NCBI RefSeq assembly: GCF_032191835.1
Contig: NC_083234.1
Span: 55,924,001 to 55,988,000, forward strand
From: Heteronotia binoei
Lineage: Eukaryota
DNA: 64,000 nucleotides
Direction of reading: 5' to 3'
The notes below the pieces were generated by a model. That model saw nothing but the letters and a program-made list of their open reading frames with translations, ran no database searches and had not been told where the DNA came from. Positions 13,509 through 42,932 of this stretch are shown here, piece by piece (positions within the stretch are counted from its first letter, which is position 1; each line of letters opens with the position of its first letter). The position numbers were made by a program, and so were the translations under genes.

Positions 13509-17480
<3,972 letters not shown>

Positions 17481-19385: not shown

Positions 19386-19961
19386 TTAATTTCCTTGAGT
19401 GCCCATAAGAGTTTTGGTATTATGTGAAAAGTGAAAAAGTACTTTTTTCCTGTTTTCTCTATCCCATACATAATTTTGTAAACCCCTGTCATGTCACCCC
19501 TCCATTGTCATTTCTCCATGCCTGAAAGCACTAACCTCTTTAGCCTTTCTTTAGCCTTTAACTAAAGAAAGGCTTCACCCTCCAACTTGCATAGCAAAAG
19601 TTTTAAGCTGATGGTCACAGAACATGAGCCAAGACATAAAAAGTCAATTACCTGAACAGGCACCATTTCAAGTTTTGGTATGGAGAGAACAAAGATTTCA
19701 TAGTAGGGATGCAATTGAGCAAGTCCCAACCATCTGATCTCAGCCCTGAATGATAGATATACTGATGTTTCTGGCTTTTGTGTTGCAGTTGGCTGTTTTT
19801 AAAAACCTAATTAAAAACTTGGAAATATACATCTCATCTTCTCCACAATTTTTCATTTTAAAAAAGCATATTTTATGAAAATTTGTTGCAATCCTTTTAT
19901 AATATGACTATACTCATGATAGTATTGTTTATTTCTTTTCCCTCCAAGTGCATCTGGGAAA

Positions 19962-23505: not shown

Positions 23506-23513
23506 CAGATGCG

Positions 23514-23812
23514 CAAGAGAGCCCCATGGCGCAGAGTGGTAAAGCTGCAAAACTGCAGTCAAACTCTGCTCACAACCTGAGTTCAATTCCAGCGGAAGCT
23601 GGGTTTGGGTAGCCAGCTCCAGGTTGACTCAGCCTTCCATCCTTCCGAGTTCGGTAAAATGAGGACCTAGCTTGCTGGAGGGAAAGTGTAGATGACTGGG
23701 GAAGGCAATGGCAAACCACCCCGTAAAAAGTCTGCCGTGAAAACGTGAAAGCAACGTCACCCCAGAGTTGAAAATGACTGGTGCTTGCACAGGGGACTAC
23801 CTTTACCTTTTT
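23514..23812 (+). mobile_element. Sauria SINE (Squam1)
   Basis: Head GAGCCCCATGGCGCAGAGTGGTAAAGCTGCA, tail GGGGACTACCTTTACCTTTTT. Confidence 0.9.
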
Positions 23813-23894
23813 AAACAAATGCACTGGTCAGTGGCCTGCAGTGGGGAAGGGGAGAGTAGAACTGTGCTAATGACACTAATTTTATCCATTTCCC

Positions 23895-23955
23895 TCAATC
23901 ACAAGGCTGATAGACCATAGGGGTCTTGCTGTCGTTGGAATAAATTTTCTCATGG
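23895..23955 (-). CDS. Novel TM gene, terminal coding exon (HEKIYSNDSKTPMVYQPCD-stop)
   Basis: Long pyrimidine tract ending TTCTTCTCCAG, phase-2 start, EKIY motif like upstream exons. An AG 13 nt upstream would instead give ILLQP-stop. Confidence 0.65.
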
Positions 23956-26900
23956 CTGGAGAAGAATGCTGAGGAGACGGGAATGCAGGAAAGATCCATG
24001 TTCCTCATGCCTGCAGACCTTGGGATCCAACCACAGTATCATGCCATTATATATATATTTTCAGTTGCTTTGTGGGAATTGGTTAGGTGTAGGTTATGTG
24101 CGGGAAGTTTGCATGTGCACAAGCACACATACACGAAACACTCAGCCCCCAGCCTTGCCAGAAACCTGTGAGCCACTTCCCCACACAGCCTCCAGTTTGG
24201 CTGGACAGCAGAATTTCCACATGTTCACAATTGCCATCAGTCACAGTTTGCCAACTGTGCAAAAGGGCAAATTTTTGTCACTTAATGCCATCAGCCTCCC
24301 TAAGTTTCTGGTATCTACAGAGTCTTACTCTACAGATGGATTCCTAGGGCGAGAGAATCTCTTCTCTACAATCTTATTTCCCCTGCTTACATAGATTCAG
24401 ACTGTGGTCCACCAATATTTGCATATGAATGCTCAGGCTGGGACCTATCAATGCTTGCATACACATGCTCCGGAGAAGGGCTGGAACACAAGGACAGGGG
24501 GAAGGAGAAAGTCTCTCTCTCTCTCTTTTTAACAACAATGCCATCATTGTAAACATAGCAAATATTTAACTATCATCGTAGATATCCCACTACCTTTACA
24601 ACATACACTTCTACATACAAGGATACACAACTCGGTGGGTCTCCAGGTAAATTCCCATTTTGAACAATCCTTCAAAGGCTAGTTCCTAGGAGTTTTAAAG
24701 TTCCTAGTTCCAAAAAGCACTCCATTACAGCAATAGTGCAGAACAACTGTACGAAAACTGTAGCAATTGATAACTGTAGGATAACTTGCACTAGCTTTTT
24801 AAGAGGGCAATGCTCTAAATTTTTGAAGATATAACTCCACACACTCTGAATGTAGTGCAGCGGAGAAAAGATGGACACATGCCAAACAATCAAGCAACAG
24901 CTTTGACAAGCCATAAAATGGCCTATTAAAAAAGTCAGAAGGAAGCCAGCATCCTATAACCAAGCTGTGTCATTTTACTTACAACCCCACCCCCCTACAG
25001 GGTCTGAACAGTCGGTCTTCCACAAAATAATTACCAGGAACAATTATTCAGTCCAAAATCTTTTAAAAATGGGGCATAATTGCCTGAAGAATCCAGTGGT
25101 GAAACATGCAAGAAAGTTCCTGGTCCAGTTCCTGGTCTCTTCAGTAAAAACCACCTCAGGCAGCAGGTGTCTGGGTAAAAAACCCAAAAAACCCCTCTCA
25201 GCATGAGACCCTGGAAAGCCACTATTTGGAAAGACTGTGGCTCAGGGGTTTAGCACTTGCTTGACGTGTAGAAGGTCCTCAGTTCTCTCTTTGGCATCTC
25301 CACTTAAAATGAGGCCATAGCTAGACTCACCGGTTGATAGAAAGTGATCAGAACAGACAATATTGAGTGAGCTGCCCCAATAATGAAGTTTCATCTGAGT
25401 GCTTCTTTTTGCTGGTAGAATGCAACTTTTTGGAGCCCCAAATTACATGCACAGCTGTGCATGATCAAGCACGCAGTGAGATCTTGAGCAGGCTTCTTAA
25501 CAAGACTGCCCCTCATCTTGTTTGCTACACTCACATAGAAAAACGTGGTGACCGTTGCACATCAGCGTAGGCCTTCTCAGGAGTGGATCTGGAATGACAA
25601 GAAACCTATTTCAAGGGCTGAAGGAGCAAAACCCCACCAATGGCAGTCAGAAACAAGACTGGGCCAAGCAAGGTAGTGAGTGGGTGGACAGTGAATTGGG
25701 CATAAACCTGCACAAGAGGAGACTGGCATGTGCACAATGGAGTTTAGTTAAATTCATTACAAAAATCCAGTGGTGGAAGCTCAGCAGCAAAGAACTTGCT
25801 TGGTGTGCAAGAAGTCTCTCCACTAATGAGGCTGTCCAAGACAACAGAAAGCTGCTGGCTATCAGAACAGACAATACTGAGTTAGAGGACCCAATAATGA
25901 AATTTCAGCGGAGTGCTTCTTTTTGCTGGTAGAATGTTAATTTTTGGAGCCACAAATTACATGCACAGCTGTGCACAGCCAAGCAGGCAGTGCACAAGTT
26001 TCTTAGCAAGACTGCTCCTTCATCTTATTTGTCAGACTCACGTAGAAAAAGCTGGTGCTCCTTGCATACTGACATAGGACTTCTCAGGAGTGGATCTGGA
26101 ATGACAAGAAACCAATTTTAAGGGCTGCAGCAGCAAGGCCCCACCAATGGCAATCAGAGCAAGACTGGGTCAAGCAGGAAATTCGCAGACACAAAATTGG
26201 GCACAAATGTGCATGAGAGCACAGTGGCATGTCAATGCTGGAATTTCATTGGATCCATTACAAGAATATAGTGGTAAATACTCAGTGGTAGAGAACCTAT
26301 TTGGTACACAAGGAGGTTCCCAGCTCAGTTCCTGGAGTCTCCAATTAAAAGGATCTCAGGGACACTCCCTGGTATCTCTAATTAAAAAGATCTCAAGAAG
26401 CAAGTGTCTGTGCGTGGGGAAAAACCTCTCTCTCATGAGAACCTGGAAAGATGCTATTTGGAGAGGCTGAAGCTCAGTGGCAGAACGGTTGCTTGATATG
26501 CAGAAAATCCCTGCTTGATCTTTGGCATCTCAACTTAAAATGAGGCTGCAGCAAGACTCTCTGTCCAAGATAACAGAAAACTGCTGGCTATCAGAATAGA
26601 CAATACTGAGTTAGAAGATCCCAACAATGAATAGACAATATTGAGTTAGAAGATCCCAATAATGAAGTTTCAACTGAGTGCTTCTTTTTGCTGGTAGAAT
26701 GTTAATTTCTGGAGCCGCAAATTACATGCACAGTTGTGCACAGTCAAGCAGGCAGTGAACAAGTCTTTCTTAGCAAGACTGCTCCTTCATCTTATTTGTC
26801 ACACTCACGTAGAAAAAGGTGGTGCTGGCTGCATACTGACGTAGGGCTTTGGAGGAGAGGATCTGGAACGACAAGAAACCAATTTTAAGGGCCGCAGAAG

Positions 26901-29900
26901 CGAGGCCCCACCAACGGCAATCAGAAACAAGACTGGGTCAAGCAGGAAATTGGCAGACACAAAGTTGGGCATAAACTGCATCTGAGAGGACAGTGGCATT
27001 CAATGCTGGAATTTCATACGATTCATTACAAGAATATAGTGGTAGATACTCAGTGGTAGAGAACCTGTTTGGTACACTGGGAGGTTCCCAGTTCAGTCCC
27101 TGGAATCTCCAGTTAAAAGGATCTCAGGGACACTCCCTGGCATCTCTAATTAAAAAGATCTCAAGAAGCAAGTGCCTTGCGGGGGTGAAAAACCTCTCTC
27201 TCATGAGAACCTGGAGAGATGCTATTTGGAGAGGCTGAAGCTCAGAGCCAGAGCACTTGCTTGACATGCAGAAAATCCCTGTTCCATCTTTGACATCTTG
27301 ACTTAAAATGAGGCCACAGCAAGACCCGCTGTCCGAAACAACAGAAAGCTACTGGCTATCAGAATAGACAAAATTGAATTAGAAGACCCCAATAATGAAG
27401 TTTTAGCTTCTTTTTGCTGGTAGAATGCTAATTTTTTGAAGCCACAAATTACGTGCACAGCTGTACACAGTTGAGAAAGCAGTGAGTTCTTGAACAAGTT
27501 TCTTAGCAAGACTGCTCCTTCATCTTATTTGTCACACTCACGTAGAAAAAGGTGATGATGGAAGCACACTGATGTAGGACTTCTCAGCAGAGGATCTGGA
27601 ATGACAAGAAACCAATTTCAAGGGCTGCAGCAGCAAGGCCCCAACAGCCATCAGAAGCAAGACTGGGTCAAGCAGGAAATTGGCAGACACAGAGTTGGGC
27701 ATAACCATGCACAAGAAGACCCCAGGATGTTGACGCTGGAATGTCATTGGATTAATTACATGCTTTTGCTTTCTCACTTGCTGCTTTTGTGTTCACAACT
27801 CCTGCCAACTGTTTTACAACCACTGTAACCGTTTTATCATGGGGTGATGATTTTCAGCCTCATTTTAATGATATTCTTTGACTTAATTTGAATTCATCAT
27901 AATTTTTGGCAGGTCTCATTGCTACTGAAGTTTGGAAAATGCACCTAGAATTTTTATGATGGAATACACAATATAAATTATCTGAAATAAGTACACATAC
28001 TACATTTTATTTATCCTTCTAAGAAAGTCTCCTAAGCATACAAACAAAACTTCACACACCAGACAAGTTGGGAGGAGACAGATGTTCCGCATCTCCACCG
28101 ATGCTGAAAACCCTGTTTTCATAAATGTCTCCATCTAATGCCATCTCTTAGGACTCTAACTAGTCATTTCTACTTCTAAGATAAGCCCCCAAAATATCCT
28201 ATGGGTCATTATATACTGTCAAGAAATTTCTCTCCCTCCCTCCCCACCATGTCTTACGTCTGGACTTGATGAACCCCTCCAGAGGTATCGAACTCATTTG
28301 TTATGAGGGCCAGATCTGACACAAATGGGATTTTGTAGGGCCGGGCAACATATGTTAAAAATGTAATGTGAGATAGCAGTAATATAAACTTTATAAAGGA
28401 CTCGATAAACACATTTAAAGATGTTATTTTTAAACTTAAAATACAAATGTGTTTAAAACTCTTGTAATATTTTGTTTAAAATGAAAAGGTGGGGGGAATA
28501 GTGGGATCCAGCAATGCAATTTTTAAAACAAAATGTCAAGAAAAAGCACAAGGATCACAGCAGAAACTAAAAATATAAAATGCTCTGAGCCTGGGAAAAC
28601 AATGAAATGGCATTGCAAGCTTCTCTCTACCCCCCCACCCCCCGGGTATACTCAGATTGGCAATGGACCTCCAATGTAATATCCTCTTTTGACTGTGGAT
28701 TCCCAGGTTAGAGTACTCATTAGGTCAGGTCCATTGAGCAGAGACAAGCTGGGTCAAAGCATCAGCCCTTTATTTGCAAGGATACAACTCCAGGAAGCAT
28801 GAGCATCAGCTGGCTATGCCCCCACCTTTCCATTTTCAACCAAATATTTCAAGAGTTTTAAGCATTATTTCATTTTATGTTAAAAATAATATCTTCAATT
28901 GTGTTTGCCTGTGTCCTTTATAAAGTGTATATCTCTGCTCCCTCCCATTACATTTTATGGCACGCGTGGCCCAGCCCCATAAAGTTCCATTTGTGTCAGA
29001 CTTGGCCCTCCTAACAAATGAGTTCGACACCCCTGTCCTAATGCAAGCAGTTGGTGGCACTGTGCCAGAGGAGAAGCGACAGAGAAACCCCTCCAAGGGT
29101 TGGATGAGCAGCACTTCTTCATACGGAGACGAAGGATGGTTGCTGGGTGCCTAAACGCTTTAGAAAGCTGAAAGGAGTTGCTCTTCTGGGTCAACAGAAC
29201 CACTCCACCACACATGCAATCAATAAATAAAATAGGAAGCACAAAAGGTTTCTTTGTGACGGGCAACTGGTAAAGTCTGAAGTGAGATGAGAATGACTGT
29301 TGATCTTTCAAAGCCTTGCTGTAGAAACTCCGGCGACATATTAAGTGGCTAGACATGCTTTTCTGTGTTAGGCTGCCAGCACACAGCTGCCAAGAGACTG
29401 ATCATTAAGGCTATGTTGCCTGGCCTGCTACCCTCTCTAAGCCAGCTATTATTTAGTTTTTCATTGCTGTCTTGACAACATGCTGAACATGTTATTTCAA
29501 TAACTGGAAATTTCAAAGACTCTGATGCCTGGGTTGCAATAGCGTCAAGTCATTCCATCCTAATTTTACTACTTATATTCCAAATAGGCAAAATAGAAAC
29601 CACTTTCTCTCACTAATAATAATAATTATTGTATGGCAGTCTGTGTAGCACAGCCAGGAGATCCTACGATTGTCTGGCAGTCGGAAGTTCTAGCTTTTAG
29701 TGTTATGTACCACTAAGTGGCGAGCTAGACTTGTTTTTATGGCAAGAGATGTTTCAGAGGTGGTTTGCCTATGCATCCTGGCCCTGGTATTCCTTGGAGG
29801 TCACCCACCCAAATACTAGCCAGGACTGACCCTGTTTAGCTTCTGAGATCTGATGCAACTGGGGTAGCCTGGGCTATCCAGGTCAGGGCACATTCTCCCA

Positions 29901-32900
29901 CTCATATCCAAGGAGGGAATCAATGCAACTTAGAGCACCTGCTTTGCATGCAGAAGACCCCAGCTTCAGTCCTTGGCCACTCCAAGCGAATGGATCTCTG
30001 GCAGAGCATGTTGGAGAAGACTGTTCTTTGCCTGAGATCCTAGAGAGTCACTGCCAGCCAGAGAAGGAGTACTGAGCCAGAGAAGGAATACTAAGGGGAG
30101 GGATGGCAGCTCAGTGGTAGAGCATCTGCTTGGTAAGCAGAAGGTCCCAGGTTCAATCCCCAGCATCTCCAACTAAAAAAGGCAAGTAGGTGTAAAAAAC
30201 CTCAGCTGGAGACAAAACACATGATCCATCTGCCTTTTGGCAGGGAAATGTAGCACATAAAGATACAGCAACAATTCCAAAAGTATTATGCCCCCAAATT
30301 CACCCAGCACCTTAATGTTCTTTCAAGCTGCGGCGAAGTTTCCTTGATGTCCCACTCCCTCCACCACCCTCATGCAGCAGTGGGCAGCAAAAGAACCATC
30401 CTCTTGCTATTTCAACTTACTTGGCTGCTTCCCCTGCTCCATCAGAACTTGGATATTTGGTCTCTGAGCGGCGTCTGAAATCACAGAAAGCACATTTCAC
30501 TGCCACGTTGCCAAATGCAATAAACACTTCTCCATGCAACTCTTGCTACTACTGAGAAAGCAGAGGGCACTTGCAGAGGGCACCAAAAATCCATGGAGTT
30601 TCCCTTGCATTTTCCTTATGTTGCCTGCCACCTCAGCCATTTTCTCTCTCCACTATCATAGGGTATTTTCTTTTTGAACTGGGCAGAGATCTACTTTTTT
30701 TTTTTTTTTACAAAAATGAAAGCTGGGGATTCAGAGGTACTGCAGACCATGGCTAACTGTGCTGCAATAATCTTGCAAATGTTAACTTTTAAAACAGCCA
30801 CGAAAAAGTTGCCTGGTGTGCATATGTGAGTGTGGAGGGGGAATGCCAGCCATGGGGGGCAGAGGAAAGGAAAATGGTGCTTCAAAAATATGCACATTCC
30901 TATCCACCTAGCATGAAAAGGCACTACCTGCAGTCTCTCCAAAAAGTTCCTTATCAGATCAGGTCAAGGGAAGACTACAGCAAAAAAACAATAAAACCAG
31001 GTTTTACCCTGAATACACAACCTCCATGTGGAAGCTACCAAATTATGCTTTTATGTCTGAGGCTAACACTATCTAACCAACGTGGTGCAGCGGTTCATTG
31101 ACAAGGATCCAGGCGATCCAGGAGACCCATGTTTGAATCCTGACTGCTACAGATTCTTGGGTGACCTTGGGCCAGTAAATGTCTCTCAACCTAACCTATC
31201 TCTTTAGGTTGCTGTGAGGATAAAACAGGAGAGAAGGACAAGCTTGTAAACCACTTTGGATCCCCACTGGGAGAAAAAACAGGGCATAAGTATCTAAAAT
31301 AAAAATAAATTCTATAATTCCAACTTGGCAGAAGGGAAAAGGGACAGTTAAAAAGGAGGCCTCTGTGTAATTGACAATAACTAAGTACCAACACAAGCAA
31401 TTGTTACTTGGAATACGATTCAGCATCCAGAGAATCCCAGCTTTCATTTAAAAGAGAAATGCATTTCTAGTCCTCACAATCATGAAAAAGAAGTTTAGAA
31501 GCACACAAGCAATGCTTTTTATAGTATCCAGAGTCAGAAGAAAAGGCAAAGGTGGGGGTTTCAGTGGATTAGATAGGTTCATGGAAGACTAGTCTATCAA
31601 TGGTTACTAGCCACAGTGACTGAGGAGAACCCCCACATTCAGAGACACTAATTGTCTGAATCCCAGAGCCAGGAAGCAACATCAGAGGAAGGCCTCTGCC
31701 TCTTTGCCCTATTGTTGGTTGGCCACTGTATGAGACAGGATCCTGGACTAGATGGGGCACTGGTCTGATTCAGCAGGGCTCTTATCTTCTTCTGCTTGTC
31801 TCCCTCATAATTAGCAAAACTAAGGGCATGCAAATCTACTTAATGAATAGAGGTCACTTTTCTGGATGTGGGAGAACCAGATCAAGGAAACAGAACAGCA
31901 TGGTCTCTAGACAACCCACAGCAACACCAATAGTGCAGACATTGTGTAATTTAAGGAGAGCAACTTGCTGGATCACGCTCACGGTCTGATTCAGCACAAG
32001 GCAGTATTCGGTTTTCGGTACTGACCAAAAGTCTGTCCCACTTCCATACCATCTAGTCTTTCCAGCTCACCTAGGACCAGGGTGCAGGTCTTTAGGATCC
32101 ACGTATGAACTCTCTGCAGCCCTAGAATGACAGAAGGGAGTCTTCAGTGTGGAACTCACAGAGAAGATGCAAAAGACCGTGTAAAACAGCTTACGATGTC
32201 CCATTTCCTTCTCTATCACTGTATAAACTATGCAGATTATTCAAGGCATAGGCTTGTAAAGAAGTTACAGACCAGCTCTGCTTAGGTTAGCCCTAAACTG
32301 TACAGAGTTTACCTCAATTACCAATCATATGGTTGAACAGAAGAAACCAACCAGAGCTAGCAATGCACTGGCCATTAGAGTCACTGGGAAAAGTCCTGGA
32401 GGGGGGCAATGGCCTGCGGACTGCCCCCTCACCAGAGCCAACCCTAGCCCAAGTGAGGGATGGCTCTCACCCTACATGGCACGAGTGGCAGCTGCCACAA
32501 ACTGGTGACCATAACAAAACCCCAAAAAGCAAAATTTACAAATAGAATATAAAACTGACCTATTATGTTTAAAGTCGCCTACATAAGAGGAAAAAGTTGG
32601 CATAAGAAAACCAAAGGCTGCCCAGCAGATGGGCAAAACTAAAACAGGAATTGGGAAGTTGGAGGTAGAAACAGCAAGGATAAGAAATTCAGAATGACCC
32701 CTAAATAGTATTAGGCAGTCCTTTTGATAACTCTGGTCCCAAGCCATAAATGACAGATTTCATAATCATAGACAATTTGAGCATACAATGTTCAGAAGCT
32801 TCTTTAACCTTTATAACCATGGGGTCAGTCAGATTAGAGAGAGCCAGTTTGGTGTAGTGGTTAAGTGCGTGGACTCTTATCTGGGAGAACTGGGTTTGAT

Positions 32901-35900
32901 TCCCCACTCCTCCATTTGCACCTGCTGGAATGGCCTTGGGTCAGACATAGCTCTCGCAAGAGTTGTCCTTGAAAGAGCAGCTGCTGGGAGAGTCCTCTCA
33001 GCCCCACCCGCCTCACAGGGTGTCTGTTGTGGGGGAAGAAGATATAGGAGATTGTAAGCTGCTCTGAGTCTCTGATTCAGAGAGAAGGGCGGGGTATAAA
33101 TCTGCAATTCTTCTTCTTCTATTACACCAAACAGGTGGGGTTTTTTTCTTGGAAATATGCAAGCAATGCTAGTTAAAGATCAGAAAGCAGTCAGGCTTAA
33201 TTTAACAGTTACAAAGTGGGCCTTCAGCATCCCATAAGGCAGATCTATATGTCTCCTGTAACATTATTTATAATAAATGAAATTACTTTGTTTAATTTAA
33301 TTGATGCCCATTGCAGAAATTCTCTTTTATTGGCTCAGAGTTTTGGTAAATTATTATTTTAAAAACCCTAACTGAAAACAGACCTTTCCTTAAAATACAA
33401 CTGCTACTGATTATAAGTAGGGAGGGTAGAACAACTTGCTACTCACTCCTTCATTGATTTGTATTTAGATGATCTTGGGGCCAAATACACAGGCTCTGGA
33501 CGGCGTCTGAAATCACAAAAAGCTGGTCTAAGTATCTTGCCTTAAACAGCCTCCTCTGAGGCCACCGTGTGGATGTCAAACCAGAACTGCTAAAAAAGGA
33601 TATTCAGTTGACTCCCAGAAGCTGGATTCCATAGATCCAATCCACTAATGGTGGCATTTTTCTCCAGTTCAGGGAGCCATCCCCTAGCACAAGAGGTGCC
33701 TGAGTTGGGAAGGCTTCTTGCCTCAAAGGAAAGTGTCACTGTTAGCAACATGAGAAACCATGAAATTCAGCCACACACTTTTGTGAGAACTTGGGCAAGA
33801 GACTATCAGAGGGTTTTTCTTGACTTCTTTTGCCCCAGGCTTGTAATAAAGTAGGCAATACTCTTGGGAATGCAACTTTGCTTTCTCTTTCCACCAGGGC
33901 TTTTCTTGTAGAAAAAGACCAGCAGTAACTCATTTGCATATTAGGCCACACCCCTGATGTTACCATTGTTTCACATGGGGCTTTTTGTAGAAAAAGCCCT
34001 GCAACAATCTAACTAACAACTGTAATAACTATCTACAACTAACTACAACCTACAAATATAAGAGAAAAAAAGTTCACCGACCGAAGCAGAAAGATCGACT
34101 GATCAGCGCGGCGGTCAGAAGAGAACTGGCGGGATGACCGCGCCTGTCGCAGTGAGCATGCGGGGTGGGGCTCCTGGGCATGCGCACTGGGGCGTCGGCG
34201 CGGAAATCCGCAGCTTTTGAGTTTACCGATCGAGATCGGCGCAGGCGCCTTACTCCCATCAGTGTGATGCACAAAGACCACGAAGAAGATCTGCATTCCT
34301 GCTCAAAAAAAGCCCTGCTTTCCACTAGGCAAGGACAGACAATCGCCAGGCAATGCCATCATCAGAGTTATATAGTATATCTAGTAGTAAAGTGGGTTGG
34401 CTCAGACCAAAGTGACAAAAATCAGATGGCCACAGACAAAATAAGGAATTCAATGTATTTGGGATATTCTCCGACAATGTAGAAAATATCACCTTGTAAA
34501 TTAGGCAAAAGGGAAAATAAATGCCCCAACACTGACTGAGTACACTTCAGAAGGCACAGAATGTTCAGAGAGCCAGTTAAGGGGGGGTGGGATAAATGGC
34601 TTGCTTGAGTCGCTGGGATACAGAATCCTGGAAGGGATAGGAGTTTCCAAACTGATTATTCCTCCCAGCCCTACCACTTGCCAGAAGCATTTTGCTTCTC
34701 CTAAGTAGCAAGCTTGATGGCGAAATGCCTAAAAAGCTGCCCACATAATCAGAGTATACAGAAATATACTCACTTTCAAATTCAAGGTGGAGGAAAGGGG
34801 TGGAAATACCGAAAATGACCAGAAGAGGACTGAGCATGCTCATTGCCCTCCAGTAGGCATGAATTATCAGCAGTAGTTGGGTATTGGAAAAGCTCCACCT
34901 ACTTGAGTTCCTAACAGCTTAAAGTATCCCAGAAGCAGAGATTTAAGCTGGGGGGAGATTTTCCTCTGTCCTCCCCCTCCACTCTCCCTCAATTTGTTTC
35001 ACAGATTTCATAAATATATGCATGACATTTCTCTAATGATTCCTGCCACTAGAGCACATGACAGATCATAGCCCACATAAACTCACAAGCCAAAGAGATC
35101 TGTTCAGATTGCATAATTTTGCAACAAGTTTTTTTATGGTGCAAAATTCAGAATATTCTTCATCTGAATTACAGAAATAAATTGCTCAGAAGTATACAAA
35201 CTGCTACTGGTTTGGCACATGCAATTTACGGGATTGGCAGGAGGGGCCTTGTTGGAGGAGCCATTGACTAGACTCTGCCATGAGGCTACTGTGAACTGTG
35301 CTCCCTGGTGCCACCAACCCCAGAGACTGGAAGTGCCAATGGCTTCATTCCTAGATACATTCTGGACCAGCACATTAGACCCTAGGAATCTCTGACATTA
35401 ACACAGATCAGTTTTTAGACTTCATGGTTGCAAAGAAAGACTAGAAAGTGCATGGACACTGCCTTCTGTAATCTCAGAAGTTAGAGAAGCAGCTTAGCAA
35501 GGTTCCTAGCAGTCATAATACGACTTCAGCTCTGCACCATGTGCTCACCCTTGCCATCGCTCTGGTGTGACCTTTTGCATAATTCAGATTGTGTAATTTT
35601 GCAAGAAGTTTTTTATGGTGCAAAATTCAGAGTATCATTAGTCTGAATTACAGAAATAAATTGTTCAGGATTATACAAACTGCTACTGGTTTGTCACATG
35701 CAACTTACGGGATCGGCGGGAGGGCCCTTGTTGGAGGAAGTGAGTCTTTTCTATCTTTTTTCTCCTTTTTGTCTTTTTTCCTTGGACACAAGACAAAGAG
35801 ACCCCTTGTTAATACAGCTCTGCAGTAATGGGCTACCAAACAGGATCTTGCTGCCCTGACATATCTCTAGGCCCAAGATCAATATGCTTACTGCTCTAAA

Positions 35901-38900
35901 AGGGCTCCAATGTACATGAACAAAACAGGTAGGCATCCACAATGGTGTTACCCCAAAAAGTTCTGAGTAAACCAACTAATTCCCTGATCTGCCATCGTAA
36001 GAAAGGGAAAGGGAGGTTGCTACTTCTTTCTGTATGACTATCACTTGCAGTGACCACTAGTGCCCAGTCCTAGGGGCACACGTGAGACCACAGATGAACA
36101 TAGGAAGAGCCCTGCTGGATCCGAGCGCAGGCCCCTCTACTCCAGCATCCTGTTGCCAACGATGGCCATCAAGAGACGTCCAGGATAGCTTTGAAGCTGC
36201 CTCATAGCAATGGTGTTCTGTTAAGCTCCCTTTGAACACAGAGGCTTCATTCTGTCATCATGGTCTAATAGTTGTCAACACACTTCCGTTTAAATTGGTT
36301 AATTCCACTGTTAAAGGACACAGCAGTGTACTGAAAAAAAAAAATGTTAGCAGCAGATACTGTGAGCAGCAGAGTTACAGGGCCCACAGTTCAACAGCAG
36401 AGCTAATGCCTTTCATTCAGAAGGTTCCAGATTGAATCCAGTACCTTGGGTACAAAACATGGTGGGGGGGAGATGGGCCAATGGCCTGATTCTACATAAA
36501 GCAGAGTTATATGTTCAAGAGATGCTGGCAAAAGAAGGGTATAGTTAGGGGGTCTCATCAGGAATAGCAAGACTTACAACAGGCTTCCCTCGCTGAAGAA
36601 CAGGAACATGAGCCATGACTGCACTGGGGACCAGGCCTGTAGCTGCGAGGGCGCCTGTGGGGACACAGCCCCCCCAACTTCTGGGTGAGGCCCCCTGACT
36701 TGGGGCCCCCAAACAGCCTCCAGGGCCTCTGCTGCATCCTGGAGCATAGGACAGGGGGCAGAAGCAGTCCCCAGCCTCCCCCTCCAGTTAAAAGAGCTGC
36801 GGGCCGATCAGCTGATCAGCGGGCCCTTTAACCCAGCACTGGATTCAACTGCTCCATAGCTATTGGTGCTCCTGACTTGGCTGGTGACGATGAGTCAGGG
36901 TGCACTAGGACCCAGTAGAGCAGACCCTACCAGCTGCCTGTTGTCATGGGCTGCAACTCTCTCTGGAGGTGGCAGGGATCCTCTATAAATTTTAGCAGCA
37001 TTTTTACATCTAAAAGCTTCCCCGCCACAAGTAAATGTTCCATCTGACTGCAAAACTTCCCCCTTCTAATGCATATCTGAAGCTCTTAATGTTCTTTGTA
37101 ATTCACAAGGTAAAACTCGCTCCCTCCCCCACACACGCAGGGGAAGAGCATTTCCTCTTTTAAGCCCTCCCCCACCTTCCTCGATCTCTCTAGCAGGCCA
37201 TTTATTTAGCTTCAGCTCCACAAGGCTGGTTCCTACCAAGAGAATGACTCAATGTATTTTTAAATAACAAGACACCCCGTATGTGTGTTCACTATAACTT
37301 GTGAACAGGACTTGTGTGTGTGCATGTGTGTTTGTGGTGGAAGGGGGGGGAGGGGGAAGGCTGGCAATATGCTTTCATTACAGTTATCCTGGATTTGGGT
37401 AGCAGAACTGTGATATATGGGCTTTAATTCATAGAGTTAACAACTTTGGCTGGTAAATTCCTGGATATTTTTGGTGGATCCTGAGGAAGGCAGGGAGCTC
37501 AGTGGCATGTAAAGTCAACATCCCTCCCCCCCCCCCCCCAAAAAAAAGCCATTCTGTACTGGGGAAATTATCTCTGTAGTCCAGAGAACATTTGTAATTC
37601 TGGGTGATCTCCAGGCCCCACCAGGAGGTTGGAAGCCCAATACCTTGGGAGTAAACCCACTGAATAAGAGGACTAAAGGTAGTTCTGCTTTCCATTGCTT
37701 CAGGTGACCATCCTGTAGTTTGCTTTAATTTTCACACACCCCCGCCCTCCCAACTTTGTTATTCCAAGGAAGTTTCCCATCCAAATACTTGCCAGAGCAA
37801 TTTCAAGTTTTTGAAAATTGGTTATTTGGGGGGGTGGGGGCAGTAGGGAGTTTGAGTGTTCTGGGAACAGAAACAGATTTGGGTGGGTAGCAACGCTGGT
37901 CTGAAGTAATAGAACAAAATAGAACAAAATTTGAGTCCGGTGGCTCCTTTAAGGCCAACAAAGTTTAATCCTGGCACCAGCCAGTGTGATGGTAGGTCAG
38001 GGTGGCCATGAGAGCAGCTATGGATTGGGGCCCTTGAGTGCCCCCCCAAAAATCAAAGGCCCCCTGACCTTCCAAATTCTGGATACGTGGCTGCTGGGGA
38101 CCCACTACAGGGATGGAGGTGGGGTGGCGGCTGATGTAGCAAAACACAGGGAAAAGGAAGGCCCCTGATTTTGAGGCCTCCAATGACTCACCATTGTTTG
38201 TTCATCAAGCGCAGGATGACAACTGCCACCAGCAGCAGAACCAATGTGGAGAAGAAACCCAAGAAGGCCAAGGAGCCTATGATAGCCACCAGCGTACTCT
38301 TGCTCAACACCTCAGGGCAAATGCATGTTGTTTGTGTTGCTATGAAAGAAAGGGGAAGGCCACATGAGAAATCATTCTCCTGAATTCCCAAGCCTTTCCT
38401 TCCAGCAGGGAAGCCAGTTAAAACTCTTCAAGATTTTAGTCACTAATTTCCTGTCTCCACATGACTCCCAGGCAACATAGAGCATTTACCCCCAAATCAA
38501 CTTGCTCTCCTCTTAGCCACATCTCACGCCCACCCCCAGAACCCCACCTACCTCACCTCCATAGTCAAACGACTGATTCTGGAAATGAAAGATGTCTTAC
38601 TTGGTAGTAAGGCCTGCCGGTTCCCAACTGACACCTCGCCGGAATCTTCAGGGTACTATGGGTGATAAAACTGAGTAAGTTCATGATCTTGTTTTGGTTC
38701 CAAGCAACACATCTCCATGGCCAAACATGAATGACCAGTTCAAACTCTGGCATAATTTATTTAAAACATTTAAATGCCATCTTTTCACTCAGTACAGGGT
38801 CAAAACATTAAAACAAATTTTAAAATACTTATCTATAAAATGACAAGAACAGTGTAACAAAACACAAACGTGTAGACACATACACTTAAAGATGAAGGAC

Positions 38901-41184
38901 AGTCAAACAGAAATGTTCACTCACTTGCGGAAGCCAATGATAGAGGGAAATCAACAAAACCTTCTGGCAAGGGAATTCCACCGTTTCAGTGCCATGACTG
39001 AGAAGGCGCTTTCTGGGGTGCCACCTGTCTAAGCTCAGACGGCAGAGGCACCTGCAGCAGGGCCTCCAAGATGACTGTAGCTGATAGGTTCATATGGGAG
39101 CAAGTGGTTCTTAAAGGATAGCAGATGCAATGAAAATTCTTTCTTTGCCTTTGGAGATCTGCTGCCAGGCAAACTGAACAGCATTAGGCTAGAAGTTACA
39201 ACAGGCTGATGGGAAACAAAGCTGTTCCACATTTCTCCTCAGGAGATAATTCCTTTGTAAAGCCTCTGAGTGTCCATGCAGCATTTTTAAGTGTTCCAAG
39301 CATATTACGTTCATCGGCCACTATCATTATTCCTACAGCACACTGTAATCACAGCAGAAGCAAAATTCAAGCCCGGGGCCTCCTGCTTTGTACTTCAGTC
39401 TTTTGTATTCTGTGCTACACTAGCTTCCCAATCAAAATCTCTCCAGCCACAGTTCTTTCTTATTTACCTTGAACTATTAATTGCTCTACTGAACCCTCCT
39501 CTGTCCCTGCACAGAGGATTTAAGGTGACACTCATTCAGTGGCATTTCTGTACTCACCCTCCTTAACATCCTTATTGGTCTATGGACAATATTTTCACTA
39601 TCTTCTGATTCATCTGAAAGGGTACTCATTTGGTCTCCTTTTGCTGATAGTTCTTGGGAAGCAAAACTGCGTCCCTGCATTCTAGAGGTCTCTGCCCCAT
39701 TTGTTTTTGCTGGAAATCAAAGACAGAAGATTCACACTTGGTTAAAATCCAATAGGAGAAATGATCAAGTCCCTTCCATGGTTGAACATTGAGCCACTTG
39801 TACAAGACATGAGATACAGGGCTCCCCACAGATCAGTGTTCTCACCCAACACTTAATTAGATCATCTGGAATGCTGGAGTTGGGTGCCCTCAGTATAGTG
39901 AGAACACACAACCATATAGGTCTGTTCCTGAGTCTTCAAGAAGCTGCTGCCTCAGCTGTGAACCAGCGCTCAGTATTAAGTTGGATCCATTGCCCCATAC
40001 TTCCCTCTAAGTTACTGATCCCTCTTAAAAGAAAACTTTTACAATGTTCTGATGATGTTTAACAATGACACAAATAATTAGGATCAAACTACCTGCTGGA
40101 AAAGTGCCTAGAGAATTGTGGATAGTGCCCATCTGGTTACTCTGTTCCACTATTAAAAATATTGGGAACCTGCAAGTCATCTTCTTAAATATATTATGGG
40201 GAAGGAGCTTCCTTGGGGCGTCATATCTGTATCTTTGTAACTGATTTAAAGTGGAGGAACATGACATGGATTTATAGCCCTATTGGCTAGGATCCAAAGA
40301 AGCACTCAACTACTTCATGACATCCATGAGAGGTAGGCAGTGGTGGTATTTGGGGCTTTTCTTTGTACTACAGCATGCTCAAACATGTACCAACCCAAAG
40401 AACTTTTTAAAAACCCAACTGTGATAGGGCATGGAGAGGGACACTGCTGTTCAAAACAAAGGTAATCAAGAACCCCACTGGGCATATCCAAGCTCTTGGA
40501 TGCACCTAAAGTGGCTTGCTGGATCACAGTCATTATGAGTTTGCAAGAATAAGCAGTACAGCCACCTGGGAAAGGGCTACAATTACCTGAGCATAATCTG
40601 GCAAAAATCACTGAAACTATGCACTTATATTAGTGAAAGAAAAATCAGCAACTTAAAGGCAACTAACAACCCTAACAGGACAGTTTGTTCACAACTGGAG
40701 CACCACATTTCATTATCATTTGTGAACTTCTATTTCAACATATTTCTTCCTGGTTCTTGAGATCAGTTGAATAGGCCTTGCTTTTGTGTGTTTATATGAG
40801 AACCTTCTTTGATATGGCACCCACTTTGTGGAAACAAGATAGTGGGATTTCTCAGGATGTTATTTCTGCACCCCAAACAATTTTCTGAAGACTTTAGTAC
40901 TTACAATAGAATCAAGAATTACATGCCATTCTGCCCATTTCTATGGTCAATGCACCAAATCTAAACAGTGAAGAGCCAAAGGCTCCCCCACAAACCCAAA
41001 ATCTAGAGTGTGTGGAGGAAAACAATCCATGGTCATTTGCTAGAAAAATCATAAGCCTTTCAAGATCTCAACAACTACTGAGAAAGTTACCACAATCCAA
41101 ACAAACTCTAGAGTGGAACTCACATGAAGATGAGGCAATTACACTCATGGAGAATACCAAGCCACCCAGACATGCCAACAGCAT
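23895..41184 (-). CDS. Putative single-pass type I membrane protein with TMEM210-like TM module and long tyrosine-motif cytoplasmic tail (15-17 exons, ~344-363 aa)
   Basis: Exon chain 41124-41184, [40587-40610], 39558-39709, 38601-38655, 38192-38339, 36578-36592, 35709-35780, 33447-33506, 32071-32121, [31408-31440], 30421-30474, 27542-27595, 26809-26862, 26042-26095, 25535-25588, 24391-24480, 23895-23955. Every exon has AG/GT boundaries, phases match in series and the joined frame is open to a TGA at 23895-23897. Brackets mark optional symmetric exons. Confidence 0.8.
24391..24480 (-). CDS. Novel TM gene, double tyrosine-motif exon (PSPEHVYASIDRSQPEHSYANIGGPQSES)
   Basis: Very strong acceptor CTTTCTCCTTCCCCCTGTCCTTGTGTTCCAG, donor TAT|GTAAGC, 90 nt, phase 2 to 2; internal PEH-x-YA-x-I repeat. 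Confidence 0.85.
25535..25588 (-). CDS. Novel TM gene, repeat exon D (STPEKAYADVQRSPRFS)
   Basis: Acceptor GGTTTCTTGTCATTCCAG, donor TAT|GTGAGT, 54 nt, phase 2 to 2. Confidence 0.8.
26042..26095 (-). CDS. Novel TM gene, repeat exon C (STPEKSYVSMQGAPAFS)
   Basis: Acceptor GGTTTCTTGTCATTCCAG, donor TAC|GTGAGT, 54 nt, phase 2 to 2. Confidence 0.8.
26809..26862 (-). CDS. Novel TM gene, repeat exon B (SSPPKPYVSMQPAPPFS)
   Basis: Acceptor GGTTTCTTGTCGTTCCAG, donor TAC|GTGAGT, 54 nt, phase 2 to 2. Confidence 0.8.
27542..27595 (-). CDS. Novel TM gene, repeat exon A (SSAEKSYISVLPSSPFS)
   Basis: Acceptor GGTTTCTTGTCATTCCAG, donor TAC|GTGAGT, 54 nt, phase 2 to 2. Confidence 0.8.
28280..29035. mobile_element. 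hAT-type element ends (complementary termini) with AT-rich interior
   Basis: CAGAGGTATCGAACTCATTTGT ... ACAAATGAGTTCGACACCCCTG; no TSD found, may be two partial copies. Confidence 0.55.
29735..29890 (-). mobile_element. 5S rRNA-derived SINE fragment
   Basis: CCACCCAAATACTAGCCAGGACTGACCCTGTTTAGCTTCTGAGATCTGATG. Confidence 0.65.
29915..30215 (+). mobile_element. Two tandem Squam3-like SINE fragments
   Basis: Decayed copy ~29915-30095 followed by a younger head GCTCAGTGGTAGAGCATCTGCTTGG...GGTTCAATCCCC. Confidence 0.7.
30421..30474 (-). CDS. Novel TM gene, tyrosine-motif exon (RRSETKYPSSDGAGEAA)
   Basis: Acceptor GCTTTCTGTGATTTCAG (paralogous to the 33506 acceptor), donor CAA|GTAAGT, 54 nt, phase 2 to 2. 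Confidence 0.8.
31408..31440 (-). CDS. Novel TM gene, optional exon (WDSLDAESYS)
   Basis: 33 nt, phase 2 to 2, open, but moderate acceptor (TTTCTCTTTTAAATGAAAG) and donor (GTAACA). Confidence 0.4.
31565..31790 (+). mobile_element. CR1-type 3' UTR fragment
   Basis: ATGGAAGACTAGTCTATCAATGG...GGACTAGATGG...GTCTGATTCAGCAGGGCTCTTA; related pieces at ~36015-36260 and ~50790-51090 (minus). Confidence 0.6.
32071..32121 (-). CDS. Novel TM gene, tyrosine-motif exon (AAESSYVDPKDLHPGP)
   Basis: Acceptor CTCCCTTCTGTCATTCTAG, donor TAG|GTGAGC, 51 nt, phase 2 to 2. Confidence 0.8.
32837..33120 (+). mobile_element. Same SINE family, full length
   Basis: Near-identical to 6536-6830. Confidence 0.8.
33447..33506 (-). 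CDS. Novel TM gene, tyrosine-motif exon (RRPEPVYLAPRSSKYKSMK)
   Basis: Acceptor GCTTTTTGTGATTTCAG, donor GGA|GTGAGT, 60 nt, phase 2 to 2. Confidence 0.8.
33896..34001. mobile_element. Short MITE (CAGGGCTTTT...AAAAGCCCTG)
   Basis: Terminal inverted repeats; related sequence nested at ~7892-8000. Confidence 0.6.
34050..34315 (-). mobile_element. CpG-rich DIRS-like terminal repeat fragment
   Basis: Isolated CpG-dense block with TCTTCGTGGTCTTTGTGCATCACAC and TGCGCATGC motifs reminiscent of reptile DIRS1 termini; assignment from memory, no TSD seen. Confidence 0.5.
35101..35740. repeat. Two diverged ~160-bp copies (35101-35262, 35582-35740) containing the 3' half of the RALPPIP exon and its donor-side intron
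   Basis: Shared GGTGCAAAATTCAGA...CTGAATTACAGAAATAAATTG...TATACAAACTGCTACTGGTTTG...TTACGGGAT. Confidence 0.85.
35709..35780 (-). CDS. Novel TM gene, basic/proline-rich exon (KKDKKEKKDRKDSLPPTRALPPIP)
   Basis: Acceptor CTCTTTGTCTTGTGTCCAAG, donor CCC|GTAAGT, 72 nt, phase 2 to 2; RxLPPxP class I SH3 ligand. Confidence 0.8.
36578..36592 (-). CDS. Novel TM gene, 15-nt microexon (C-EGSL-L)
   Basis: Acceptor GTTCCTGTTCTTCAG, donor GTT|GTAAGT, phase 2 to 2. Confidence 0.65.
37429..37480 (-). CDS. Novel TM gene, possible alternative terminal exon (WIHQKYPGIYQPKLLTL-stop)
   Basis: Strong acceptor CCCTGCCTTCCTCAG, phase-2 start matching the TM exon donor, TGA followed immediately by ATTAAA. Confidence 0.45.
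38192..38339 (-). CDS. Novel TM gene, transmembrane exon (TQTTCICPEVLSKSTLVAIIGSLAFLGFFSTLVLLLVAVVILRLMNKQ), TMEM210-like
   Basis: Acceptor CTTTCATAG, donor ATG|GTGAGT; long hydrophobic helix preceded by CxC; resembles recalled human TMEM210 ([23 protein letters not shown]...); position next to the ANAPC2 3' end matches human TMEM210. Confidence 0.85.
38601..38655 (-). CDS. Novel TM gene, ectodomain exon (YPEDSGEVSVGNRQALLP)
   Basis: Acceptor TTTTATCACCCATAG, donor CAA|GTAAGA, 55 nt, phase 0 to 1, bridging the phases of its neighbours exactly. Confidence 0.7.
39558..39709 (-). CDS. Novel TM gene, ectodomain exon (KTNGAETSRMQGR...IVHRPIRMLRR)
   Basis: Acceptor TTTGATTTCCAG, donor AGG|GTGAGT, 152 nt, phase 1 to 0, open frame. 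Confidence 0.7.
40587..40610 (-). CDS. Novel TM gene, optional 24-nt microexon (LIFARLCSA)
   Basis: Branch-like CACTAAT, acceptor GTTTCAG, donor CAG|GTAATT; phase 1 to 1; would extend the signal peptide. Confidence 0.4.
41124..41184 (-). CDS. Novel TM gene, candidate exon 1 (signal peptide MLLACLGGLVFSMSVIASSS)
   Basis: ATG at 41184, 20 hydrophobic/small residues, phase-1 donor T|GTGAGT compatible with the next exon. The 5' end is the least certain part of the model. Confidence 0.65.
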
Positions 41185-42926: not shown

Positions 42927-42932
42927 TTTATT
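42927..42932 (-). terminator. Likely ANAPC2 poly(A) signal AATAAA
   Basis: Plus-strand TTTATT ~280 nt past the stop codon. Confidence 0.55.

What the first reader, a model, noticed from the sequence alone, without database searches (positions are those of the whole stretch)
23895..41184. Hidden 15-17-exon gene: receptor-like transmembrane adaptor with a modular phosphotyrosine tail
Seen in sequence: a chain of short minus-strand exons with canonical splice sites and perfectly compatible phases that the ORF track cannot show. Joined (core model, 344 aa): MLLACLGGLVFSMSVIASSSSKTNGAETSRMQGRSFASQELSAKGDQMSTLSDESEDSENIVHRPIRMLRRYPEDSGEVSVGNRQALLPTTQTTCICPEVLSKSTLVAIIGSLAFLGFFSTLVLLLVAVVILRLMNKQCEGSLLKKDKKEKKDRKDSLPPTRALPPIPRRPEPVYLAPRSSKYKSMKEAAESSYVDPKDLHPGPRRRSETKYPSSDGAGEAAKSSAEKSYISVLPSSPFSTSSPPKPYVSMQPAPPFSTSTPEKSYVSMQGAPAFSTSTPEKAYADVQRSPRFSIPSPEHVYASIDRSQPEHSYANIGGPQSESIHEKIYSNDSKTPMVYQPCD. 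All internal tail exons are 3n long and phase 2 to 2, and almost every one carries a tyrosine, which is unlikely by chance. Established knowledge: a single TM helix plus a disordered tail of many Tyr motifs on small exons is the architecture of transmembrane adaptors such as LAT, LAT2, PAG1 and SCIMP. Inference: this is a lineage-specific signalling scaffold, but unlike those it has a signal peptide and a short ectodomain.
Basis: partly seen in the sequence, partly recalled or inferred. Interest (0 to 1): 0.95.

Follow-up and report, generated by a model that had tools for sequence, protein, structure and literature searches.

The report
Squamate membrane adaptor gene, 3' end corrected

Summary
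All have AG/GT sites and compatible phases, and all are conserved as intact exons in Sphaerodactylus townsendi. Those that could be checked in Gekko kuhli (exons 1-4 and 6-9) are intact there too.

Two parts of the model fail:
- The 15-nt micro-exon (36593-36579) is used by no orthologue.
- The terminal exon (23955-23895) lies inside a ~525-nt SINE-bearing insertion that S. townsendi lacks.

The conserved 3' end is two exons outside the interval, at 23132-23094 and 21074-21041. The second ends in HHYEEIN-stop. The corrected protein has 343 aa.

It belongs to a squamate-wide family annotated only as "uncharacterized protein LOC..." in more than 15 species. These share the exon design and the gene order SSNA1 / ANAPC2 / this gene / TUBB4B. 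So the gene is not gecko-specific, and it is hidden only in some gecko annotations.

The architecture is a signal peptide, an acidic ectodomain, a membrane-proximal Cys, a TM helix, an R-x-x-P-P-x-P motif, about seven conserved Tyr motifs and a C-terminal Y-E-E-I/V. A Src-family-kinase-docking transmembrane adaptor is therefore the best reading, but it rests on motifs alone.

TMEM210 orthology is plausible from position and recurrent sub-threshold Pfam hits, but unproven. No RNA runs were listed for this species. The scan's other notes on this gene are all on this same window.

The parts
41124..41184 (-). Exon 1: ATG plus a 20-aa hydrophobic signal peptide (MLLACLGG...SSS), phase 0 to 1
   Evidence: Intact with a GTGAGT donor in Gekko kuhli and S. 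townsendi. Matches the N-termini of the Hemicordylus, Phrynocephalus and Sceloporus proteins. KD19 hydropathy is 1.94.
39558..39709 (-). Exon 2: ectodomain, ending in the conserved basic motif (HRPIRMLRR; RRAVRR in other squamates)
38601..38655 (-). Exon 3: YPEDSGE...GNRQ ectodomain block
38192..38339 (-). Exon 4: C-x-C-P-E-V-L motif plus the transmembrane helix
   Evidence: phmmer gave 13 squamate hits, E 7e-18 to 4e-6. dN/dS is 0.10 against G. kuhli. Single copy in this genome. Weak Pfam TMEM210 hit, 13.2 bits.
36579..36593 (-).
   Evidence: It has AG and GTAAGT sites, but no orthologous protein contains it.
35709..35780 (-). Exon 6: basic juxtamembrane stretch plus the class I SH3-type motif RALPPIP
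   Evidence: R, P, P and P columns are 94-100% conserved.
33447..33506 (-). Exon 7: RRPEPVY and SKY motifs
32071..32121 (-). Exon 8: SSYVDPKDLHPGPR motif. Its orthologue is a cassette exon in Crotalus isoforms.
30421..30474 (-). Exon 9: TKY motif, orthologous to the YQNV exon. It is a cassette exon in S. townsendi (isoform X1 versus X2).
25535..27595 (-). Exons 10-13 (27595-27542, 26862-26809, 26095-26042, 25588-25535). These are four tandem copies of the E-x-x-Y exon (YISV, YVSM, YVSM, YADV). S. townsendi has a single copy.
24391..24480 (-). Exon 14: EHVYASI and EHSYANI motifs
23433..23960 (-). Lineage-specific ~525-nt insertion carrying a SINE.
23094..23132 (-). True penultimate exon (39 nt, phase 2 to 2): ADSNLPMEEQTE
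   Evidence: Aligns to the S. townsendi RefSeq exon ANVSGSLEEQPKG with conserved AG and GTGAGT sites.
21041..21074 (-). True terminal coding exon: (G)PEEHHYEEIN plus stop
   Evidence: Same 10-aa terminal-exon design in Sceloporus, Varanus and Sphaerodactylus.

Best explanation
This is the gecko orthologue of a squamate-wide, uncharacterised protein-coding gene that lies immediately 3' of ANAPC2 and 5' of TUBB4B.

The corrected model has 15 coding exons (41184 to 21041, minus strand) and encodes 343 aa. In order, the protein has:
- a cleavable signal peptide;
- an acidic ectodomain of about 85 aa with a conserved R-x-x-R basic site;
- a membrane-proximal invariant Cys;
- one TM helix;
- a lysine-rich stop-transfer stretch;
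- a class I SH3-type motif (R-x-L-P-P-x-P);
- a disordered tail in which tyrosine is the best-conserved residue;
- a C-terminal H-x-Y-E-E-I/V.

Proposed mechanism (inferred, not shown). The protein acts as a transmembrane adaptor or scaffold. A Src-family kinase docks on the proline motif through its SH3 domain and phosphorylates the tail tyrosines. Its SH2 domain then engages the phosphorylated C-terminal YEEI/V. The other phosphotyrosines (Y-x-N, Y-x-x-M, Y-[AS]-x-[IV]) recruit further SH2 proteins.

Each motif sits on its own 3n, phase 2-2 exon. This allows exon duplication, seen here as four tandem copies. It also allows cassette skipping, seen in the RefSeq isoforms of other species. Both retune the docking code without breaking the reading frame.
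For: Gene reality:
- Consensus splice sites and one open frame.
- Exon-by-exon conservation with intact AG/GT sites in two other geckos.
- dN/dS is 0.46-0.47 overall and 0.10-0.35 for the TM exon.
- End-to-end collinearity with 15 squamate proteins.
- Identical exon design in Sceloporus and Varanus.
- A 1051-nt spliced transcript contig of an orthologue exists.
- Conserved gene order SSNA1 / ANAPC2 / this gene / TUBB4B / CIMIP2A-like.

Topology:
- Two hydrophobic peaks, an acidic ectodomain and 11 K+R in the 30 residues after the TM.

Adaptor reading:
- Tyr is the most conserved residue type in the tail: 8 columns, mean 0.85, against 0.68 or less for all others.
- [RK]xxPxxP is present in all 16 sequences, and a C-terminal Y[ED][EQ][IVL] in 14 of 16.
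- The Src SH2 domain binds pYEEI (IC50 0.5 uM) and pYEEV (1.1 uM) with high affinity (PMC2888578).
- RPLPPLP is the type I SH3 consensus (PMC11842026).
- Crotalus and Sphaerodactylus isoforms differ by whole Tyr exons.
Against: - There is no expression, phosphorylation or binding evidence in any species. No sequencing runs were listed for this genome.
- No significant similarity to any named adaptor family. The only hit was SIT at E 0.21 in 1 of 21 members.
- Y-x-x-hydrophobic motifs can equally serve as AP-complex sorting signals.
- The gecko tail evolves fast: dN/dS is 0.85 for exons 6-9 against G. kuhli.
- Some conserved motifs are degenerate in geckos. The YQNV exon reads TKYPSS here and has no Tyr in S. 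townsendi.
- ESM Atlas embedding neighbours (LIME1, SCIMP) scored only 0.82-0.84, which is chance level.
Confidence: 0.6

Rival explanations
1. It is the squamate orthologue of mammalian TMEM210, a small testis-enriched type I membrane protein. It may share that protein's unknown, non-essential germ-cell role, with the tyrosine tail being a squamate elaboration or a mammalian loss. This is compatible with the best explanation as to gene identity. It is a rival only in implying that the function may not be immune-type adaptor signalling.
For: - The gene sits immediately 3' of ANAPC2 on the same strand in four squamates. From my own knowledge this is the position of TMEM210 in human and mouse.
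- A cattle study lists TMEM210 in the same 500-kb block as SSNA1, TUBB4B, LRRC26 and GRIN1 (PMC6304683).
- PF15195 is the most recurrent Pfam hit: 9 of 21 members, best E 0.0035. It always aligns profile positions 1-50 to the C-x-C plus TM segment. No other family hits more than 3 members.
- No other PF15195 match was found in this genome.
Against: - Every Pfam score (12-17.5 bits) is below the 27-bit gathering cut-off, and only the TM-containing part aligns.
- Mouse Tmem210 has 4 exons in about 1 kb (PMC9226692), against 15 exons in 20 kb here.
- No non-squamate protein was recovered in four searches.
- ESM Atlas neighbours did not include TMEM210.
- I could not obtain a TMEM210 sequence to run a profile-profile comparison.
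Confidence: 0.55
2. The tyrosine motifs are mainly Y-x-x-hydrophobic sorting or endocytosis signals. On this reading the protein is a trafficking or cell-surface protein, possibly releasing an acidic N-terminal peptide at the conserved R-x-x-R site, rather than a phosphotyrosine scaffold.
For: - Eight of the 11 tail tyrosines in the window fit Y-x-x-[ILVMF].
- A conserved R-x-x-R basic site lies at the exon 2/3 boundary.
- No kinase or SH2 evidence exists.
Against: - An invariant class I SH3-type proline motif next to the membrane is not explained by sorting, nor is a C-terminal motif matching the optimal Src SH2 ligand rather than merely Y-x-x-hydrophobic.
- Repeated Y-x-N motifs are also unexplained by sorting.
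- Seven or more separately conserved Tyr modules are more than sorting needs.
Confidence: 0.15
3. The locus is decaying or non-functional in this gecko, a conserved-looking relic no longer expressed.
For: - Tail dN/dS is 0.85 against G. kuhli for exons 6-9.
- TE insertions lie in the introns.
- No RNA data could be obtained.
Against: - All 15 exons keep an open frame, AG/GT sites and 3n lengths across three gecko genera separated by dS 0.33-0.45.
- Overall dN/dS is 0.47, and 0.10-0.35 in the TM exon.
- The four duplicated exons all keep the Tyr codon and their splice sites.
Confidence: 0.03

Closest known systems
Squamate 'uncharacterized protein LOC...' family (e.g. Sphaerodactylus townsendi LOC125441491, Anolis carolinensis LOC103281776, Pogona vitticeps LOC110087478, Varanus komodoensis LOC123028202)
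   Same: Orthologous. It shows significant similarity, the same exon-by-exon architecture, the same neighbours (ANAPC2 upstream, TUBB4B downstream) and the same H-x-Y-E-E-[IV] end.
   Different: This gecko has four tandem copies of one Tyr exon where S. townsendi has one. Its introns are much longer (20 kb against 5-7 kb in Sceloporus and Varanus). Several motifs have diverged, for example RRPEPVY instead of PPRPEHTY.
TMEM210 (Pfam PF15195)
   Same: Type I single-pass protein with a C-x-C just before the TM. The position 3' of ANAPC2 is the same (mammalian adjacency from my own knowledge; same 500-kb block in cattle). It is the most recurrent weak Pfam hit.
   Different: Scores are below the Pfam cut-off. 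The mouse gene has 4 exons, and its knockout is fertile with a testis-enriched pattern. No long tyrosine tail is described for the mammalian protein.
SIT1 (SHP2-interacting transmembrane adaptor)
   Same: From my own knowledge, SIT1 is a type I adaptor with a very short ectodomain. It forms a disulfide-linked dimer through an extracellular Cys and has several Tyr motifs, including Y-x-N and Y-[AS]-x-V. Here an invariant membrane-proximal Cys is the only Cys in the mature snake ectodomain.
   Different: No significant sequence similarity: PF15330 scored E 0.21 in 1 of 21 members. The ectodomain here is longer and acidic. A homodimer prediction gave no answer.
PAG1/Cbp, SCIMP, LIME1, LAT, LAT2 (palmitoylated transmembrane adaptors)
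   Same: A single TM plus a disordered tail of SH2-docking tyrosines. A proline-rich SH3 ligand next to Tyr motifs, as in PAG1 and SCIMP (from my own knowledge).
   Different: Those are type III proteins with no signal peptide and a juxtamembrane C-x-x-C palmitoylation motif. The window protein has a signal peptide and no cytoplasmic Cys. There are no Pfam hits to these families.

Membership tests
Squamate uncharacterised LOC family (ANAPC2-TUBB4B interval gene) | Significant sequence similarity over the C-x-C plus TM exon and collinearity over the whole protein | tested here: met
   phmmer E 7e-18 to 4e-6. Profile searches recover only this family. End-to-end alignment.
Squamate uncharacterised LOC family (ANAPC2-TUBB4B interval gene) | Same exon architecture (phase 2-2, 3n tail exons; 10-aa terminal exon) | tested here: met
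Squamate uncharacterised LOC family (ANAPC2-TUBB4B interval gene) | Synteny: directly 3' of ANAPC2 and 5' of TUBB4B, same strand | tested here: met
   Window. Gekko kuhli, Sceloporus, Varanus and Sphaerodactylus.
Squamate uncharacterised LOC family (ANAPC2-TUBB4B interval gene) | C-terminal H-x-Y-E-E-[IV] motif | tested here: met
Met only with the corrected terminal exon 21074-21041.
TMEM210 (PF15195) | Score at or above the Pfam gathering cut-off (27 bits) | tested here: not met
   Window TM exon 13.2 bits, E 0.13. Best family member 17.5 bits.
TMEM210 (PF15195) | Genomic position adjacent to ANAPC2 | tested here: inconclusive
   Squamate position shown. Mammalian adjacency rests on my own knowledge. 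A cattle paper only places TMEM210 in the same 500-kb block.
TMEM210 (PF15195) | Profile-profile homology to mammalian TMEM210 sequences | not testable with these tools
Named transmembrane adaptor families (LAT, LAT2, PAG1, SCIMP, LIME1, SIT1, LAX1) | Sequence membership in the family's Pfam model | tested here: not met
   No hits at E <= 1, except SIT PF15330 at E 0.21 in 1 of 21 members.
Named transmembrane adaptor families (LAT, LAT2, PAG1, SCIMP, LIME1, SIT1, LAX1) | Single TM plus a cytoplasmic tail with multiple conserved Tyr-based motifs and no enzymatic domain | tested here: met
   No Pfam domain in the tail.
Named transmembrane adaptor families (LAT, LAT2, PAG1, SCIMP, LIME1, SIT1, LAX1) | Juxtamembrane cytoplasmic Cys (C-x-x-C) for palmitoylation, which defines the raft-type subgroup | tested here: not met
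   The window tail has no Cys after the TM. Many non-gecko members have one Cys at the inner TM end (AVCILR), but geckos have Val there.
Named transmembrane adaptor families (LAT, LAT2, PAG1, SCIMP, LIME1, SIT1, LAX1) | Inducible tyrosine phosphorylation and SH2/SH3 partner binding | not testable with these tools
   Requires experiments.

The most novel reading that the evidence does not exclude
The squamate gene is the long, ancestral-type form of TMEM210. On this reading it is a disulfide-linked type I adaptor that docks Src-family kinases through an SH3 ligand and a C-terminal pYEEI/V, and mammals have reduced it to a short testis protein. Its one-motif-per-exon, phase-symmetric design lets tandem exon duplication and cassette splicing generate lineage- and tissue-specific SH2 docking codes. 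In this gecko that would include two extra Y-V-S-M (PI3K p85-type) sites.
Probability: 0.3. Interest if true: 0.6.

Novelty: new member of a known kind. Interest (0 to 1): 0.45.

Why it matters
If the adaptor reading holds, squamates carry a transmembrane signalling scaffold that has never been studied. It would combine a near-optimal Src SH3 ligand with a near-optimal Src SH2 ligand.

It would also be a clear natural example of exon-level modularity. Each docking motif is a separate phase-symmetric exon that is duplicated in one lineage and alternatively spliced in others.

A link to TMEM210 would give a first functional lead for an obscure mammalian gene.

In practical terms, the work shows that gecko annotations of this gene are truncated. 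The signal-peptide exon is missing in both the S. townsendi and G. kuhli models, and the tail is also missing in G. kuhli. It also corrects the first-stage model.

Tried and rejected
- RNA evidence. Two run searches (a 5.6-kb stretch, then exon 2 alone) listed no runs, so read laying could not be used.
- Crude splice-candidate count on both strands. The filter was too strict to be informative.
- PF15195 search of the whole genome. No match anywhere, and nothing in the controls either, so it is uninformative.
- ESM Atlas look-alikes for an orthologue's core and for the window TM exon. Only scores of 0.84 or below were returned (LIME1, opalin, SCIMP; influenza M2, SMIM3), which is chance level.
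- Homodimer prediction for the S. townsendi ectodomain-stub plus TM segment (2 copies). The result was 'no answer' (score 0.02), which is evidence neither for nor against.
- Literature searches for the LOC identifiers and for the SRA run ids. Nothing found.
- Exons 10-15 in Gekko kuhli. The fetched locus ends about 140 nt before the exon 10 orthologue.
No meaningful alignment was found.
Its sequence is conserved at the level of the surrounding intron, but no protein model uses it, so it is rejected from the core model.

Full report
**Setting.** The window is G000 contig 12:55924001-55988000 of a 2.63-Gb genome. On the minus strand it carries ANAPC2. The first coding exon of ANAPC2 is near 57088, its stop is near 43209, and a poly(A) signal lies near 42930. 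It also carries TUBB4B, with its ATG at 16727, its last exon at 14585-13509, and a CpG-rich promoter at about 16500-17500. The finding lies between these two genes on the same strand.

**Checking the observation.**
- Each block is bounded by a pyrimidine tract plus AG and by a GTGAGT- or GTAAGT-type donor.
- Joining exons 41184-41124, 39709-39558, 38655-38601, 38339-38192, 35780-35709, 33506-33447, 32121-32071, 30474-30421, 27595-27542, 26862-26809, 26095-26042, 25588-25535, 24480-24391 and 23955-23895 gives one open frame of 339 aa.
- Every exon from 35780 onward is 3n long and phase 2 to 2.
- The four 54-nt exons at 27595-25535 sit in a four-copy tandem array with a 507-768 bp unit.

**Independent support from relatives.**
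- An exhaustive phmmer search with the 48-aa TM exon found 13 proteins (E 7e-18 to 4e-6), and every named one is from a squamate. Three profile searches added more, again only squamates.
- The species covered are Sphaerodactylus townsendi, Gekko kuhli, Hemicordylus, Rhineura, Podarcis, Zootoca, Varanus, Sceloporus, Phrynosoma, Phrynocephalus, Pogona, Anolis, Python, Pantherophis, Thamnophis, Erythrolamprus, Notechis, Naja, Vipera and Crotalus. All are named only 'uncharacterized' or 'hypothetical' protein, apart from one Hemicordylus isoform labelled 'proline-rich protein 36-like'.
- The window model aligns collinearly with them, block by block.
- In Gekko kuhli, the orthologues of exons 1-4 and 6-9 keep their AG/GT sites, show only 3n or compensating indels, and give an open frame.
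- In S. townsendi the same holds for exons 1-4 and 6-9, a single exon-10-type copy, and exon 14.
- dN/dS against G. kuhli is 0.46 overall: 0.10 for the C-x-C plus TM exon, 0.52 for the ectodomain, and 0.85 for exons 6-9. Against S. townsendi it is 0.47 overall.
- A 1051-nt Logan contig (SRR6291270) holds a full spliced coding sequence of an orthologue, so at least one member is transcribed and spliced as modelled.
- No sequencing runs were listed for this genome, so expression here is untested.

1. The 15-nt micro-exon at 36593-36579 has good splice sites, but no orthologue uses it. Both gecko proteins read K-Q/H-W-K across the direct junction from exon 4 to exon 6.

   - Every orthologue ends in H-x-Y-E-E-[IV]-x.
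   - A scan for that motif found ...PEEHHYEEIN-stop at 21074-21041, behind a long pyrimidine tract and an AG, in phase 2.
   - A phase 2-2 exon at 23132-23094 (ADSNLPMEEQTE) matches the S. townsendi RefSeq penultimate exon ANVSGSLEEQPKG.
   - With these two exons the protein has 343 aa and aligns end-to-end with the S. townsendi protein.
   - That exon could at most be a lineage-specific alternative terminal exon. An AATAAA lies near 23476.
   - The gene therefore extends 2.85 kb beyond the reported interval.

3. The corrected 3' end reaches into the stretch that another first-stage note (s1-328494) read as a separate gene. In Sceloporus, Varanus and Sphaerodactylus no gene is called between this gene and TUBB4B.

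**What the protein looks like.**
- There are two hydrophobic peaks: residues 1-20 (signal peptide, V-I-A before S-S-S) and about 100-140 (TM).
- The ectodomain is acidic and has no N-glycosylation sequon. It carries a conserved basic R-x-x-R site at the exon 2/3 boundary (RRAVRR in most species, RMLRR here). It also carries a C-x-C-P-E-V-L motif just before the TM.
- The second Cys of that motif is invariant. In snakes it is the only Cys of the mature ectodomain. This suggests, as inference only, an inter-chain disulfide.
- After the TM come 11 K+R in 30 residues and then R-A-L-P-P-I-P.
- Across 16 sequences, tyrosine is the best-conserved residue type in the tail: 8 columns with mean conservation 0.85, against 0.68 for Pro.
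- The conserved modules are PPRPE-x-T-Y, G-Y-E-R-L, A-Y-L-x-x-x-E-L-H-P-G-P-R, Y-Q-N-V, E-N-E-Y-I, P-L-x-K-x-Y-x-N and H-I-Y-E-E-V.
- Each module occupies its own small exon, in Sceloporus and Varanus as well.
- RefSeq isoforms differ by whole modules. S. townsendi X1 and X2 differ by exon 9. Crotalus isoforms lack the exon 8 orthologue, the two exons before the last, or both.
- The ESM Atlas model of the Sceloporus protein has mean pLDDT 0.47, consistent with disorder.

**Mechanism.** The proline motif matches the type I SH3 consensus RPLPPLP (PMC11842026). Podarcis has exactly that sequence. The C-terminal motif matches the high-affinity Src SH2 ligands pYEEI and pYEEV (PMC2888578). Y-x-N and Y-x-x-M are the Grb2-type and PI3K p85-type SH2 motifs, from established knowledge. 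The most economical reading is a transmembrane adaptor that docks and is phosphorylated by a Src-family kinase and then recruits SH2 proteins. Every step of this is inferred from motifs, and none is shown. The main functional rival is that the Y-x-x-hydrophobic motifs are sorting signals.

**Relation to known families.**
- No named adaptor family matches by sequence, so this is 'works like', not 'is a member of'.
- TMEM210 (PF15195) is the only recurrent Pfam hit: 9 of 21 members, best E 0.0035. It always aligns profile positions 1-50 to the C-x-C plus TM segment, but always below the 27-bit cut-off.
- The gene occupies the slot directly 3' of ANAPC2 on the same strand. From my own knowledge, that is where TMEM210 lies in human and mouse.
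- A cattle study places TMEM210 in the same 500-kb block as SSNA1, TUBB4B, LRRC26 and GRIN1 (PMC6304683).
- Mouse Tmem210 has 4 exons, is testis-enriched, and is dispensable for male fertility (PMC9226692).
- I rate orthology at about 0.55. It could not be tested by profile-profile comparison because no TMEM210 sequence was obtainable.

**Novelty and verdict.** The gene is real, but it is neither gecko-specific nor unannotated elsewhere. Gene models exist in many squamates, and no paper in the library mentions the six locus identifiers searched. In geckos the public models are truncated. The G. kuhli model covers only exons 2-6. The S. townsendi RefSeq model lacks the conserved signal-peptide exon. 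The transmembrane-adaptor reading is new for this family and plausible, but untested. Interest is moderate.

Noticed in passing
window 23433-23960: A ~525-nt insertion relative to S. townsendi. It contains a SINE (about 23815-23540) and supplies a strong AG acceptor, a 20-codon open frame and a downstream AATAAA (about 23476). This is a possible case of a TE-borne alternative terminal exon.
   Followed up: partly
window 25492-27658: Within the four-copy array, the 54-nt exons are less alike (70-81%) than their flanking intron. The downstream 43 nt are 98-100% identical among three copies. The changes cluster at residues +1 to +8 after the Tyr. This suggests diversification of motif specificity, or gene conversion of the flanks. 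The sample is small.
   Followed up: partly
window 19949-23505: Another first-stage note reads this interval as a separate gene. It contains the true last two coding exons (23132-23094, 21074-21041) and probably the 3' UTR of the gene studied here. Poly(A)-like signals lie at 20912, 20245 and 19933.
   Followed up: partly
window 39558-39580 and 38655 (exon 2/3 boundary): A conserved basic R-x-x-R(R/K) site lies just before Y-P-E-D/E in all family members. It fits the minimal proprotein-convertase motif and could release the acidic N-terminal part of the ectodomain.
   Followed up: no
window 36632-38094: About 1.46 kb in the intron after the TM exon has no counterpart in S. townsendi. In G. kuhli the micro-exon-like sequence lies only about 60 nt after the TM exon.
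   Followed up: no
L009:7639-7699 and L002:8272-8332: The signal-peptide exon is intact in S. townsendi and G. kuhli but is missing from their public protein models, which start at an internal Met of exon 2.
   Followed up: yes
L003:895-935: In the Logan transcript contig the conserved D-E-H-I-Y-E-E-V-N-stop is present but lies one frame off the called ORF. The ORF runs through a G-S-P repeat. This is either an assembly collapse or a real frameshift in that species.
   Followed up: no
L008 (Varanus): An NDOR1-like gene model (flavodoxin, FAD-binding and NAD-binding domains) is annotated across the whole SSNA1-ANAPC2-TUBB4B block on the opposite strand. This hints at a rearrangement relative to the mammalian gene order, or at a mis-joined model.
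   Followed up: no
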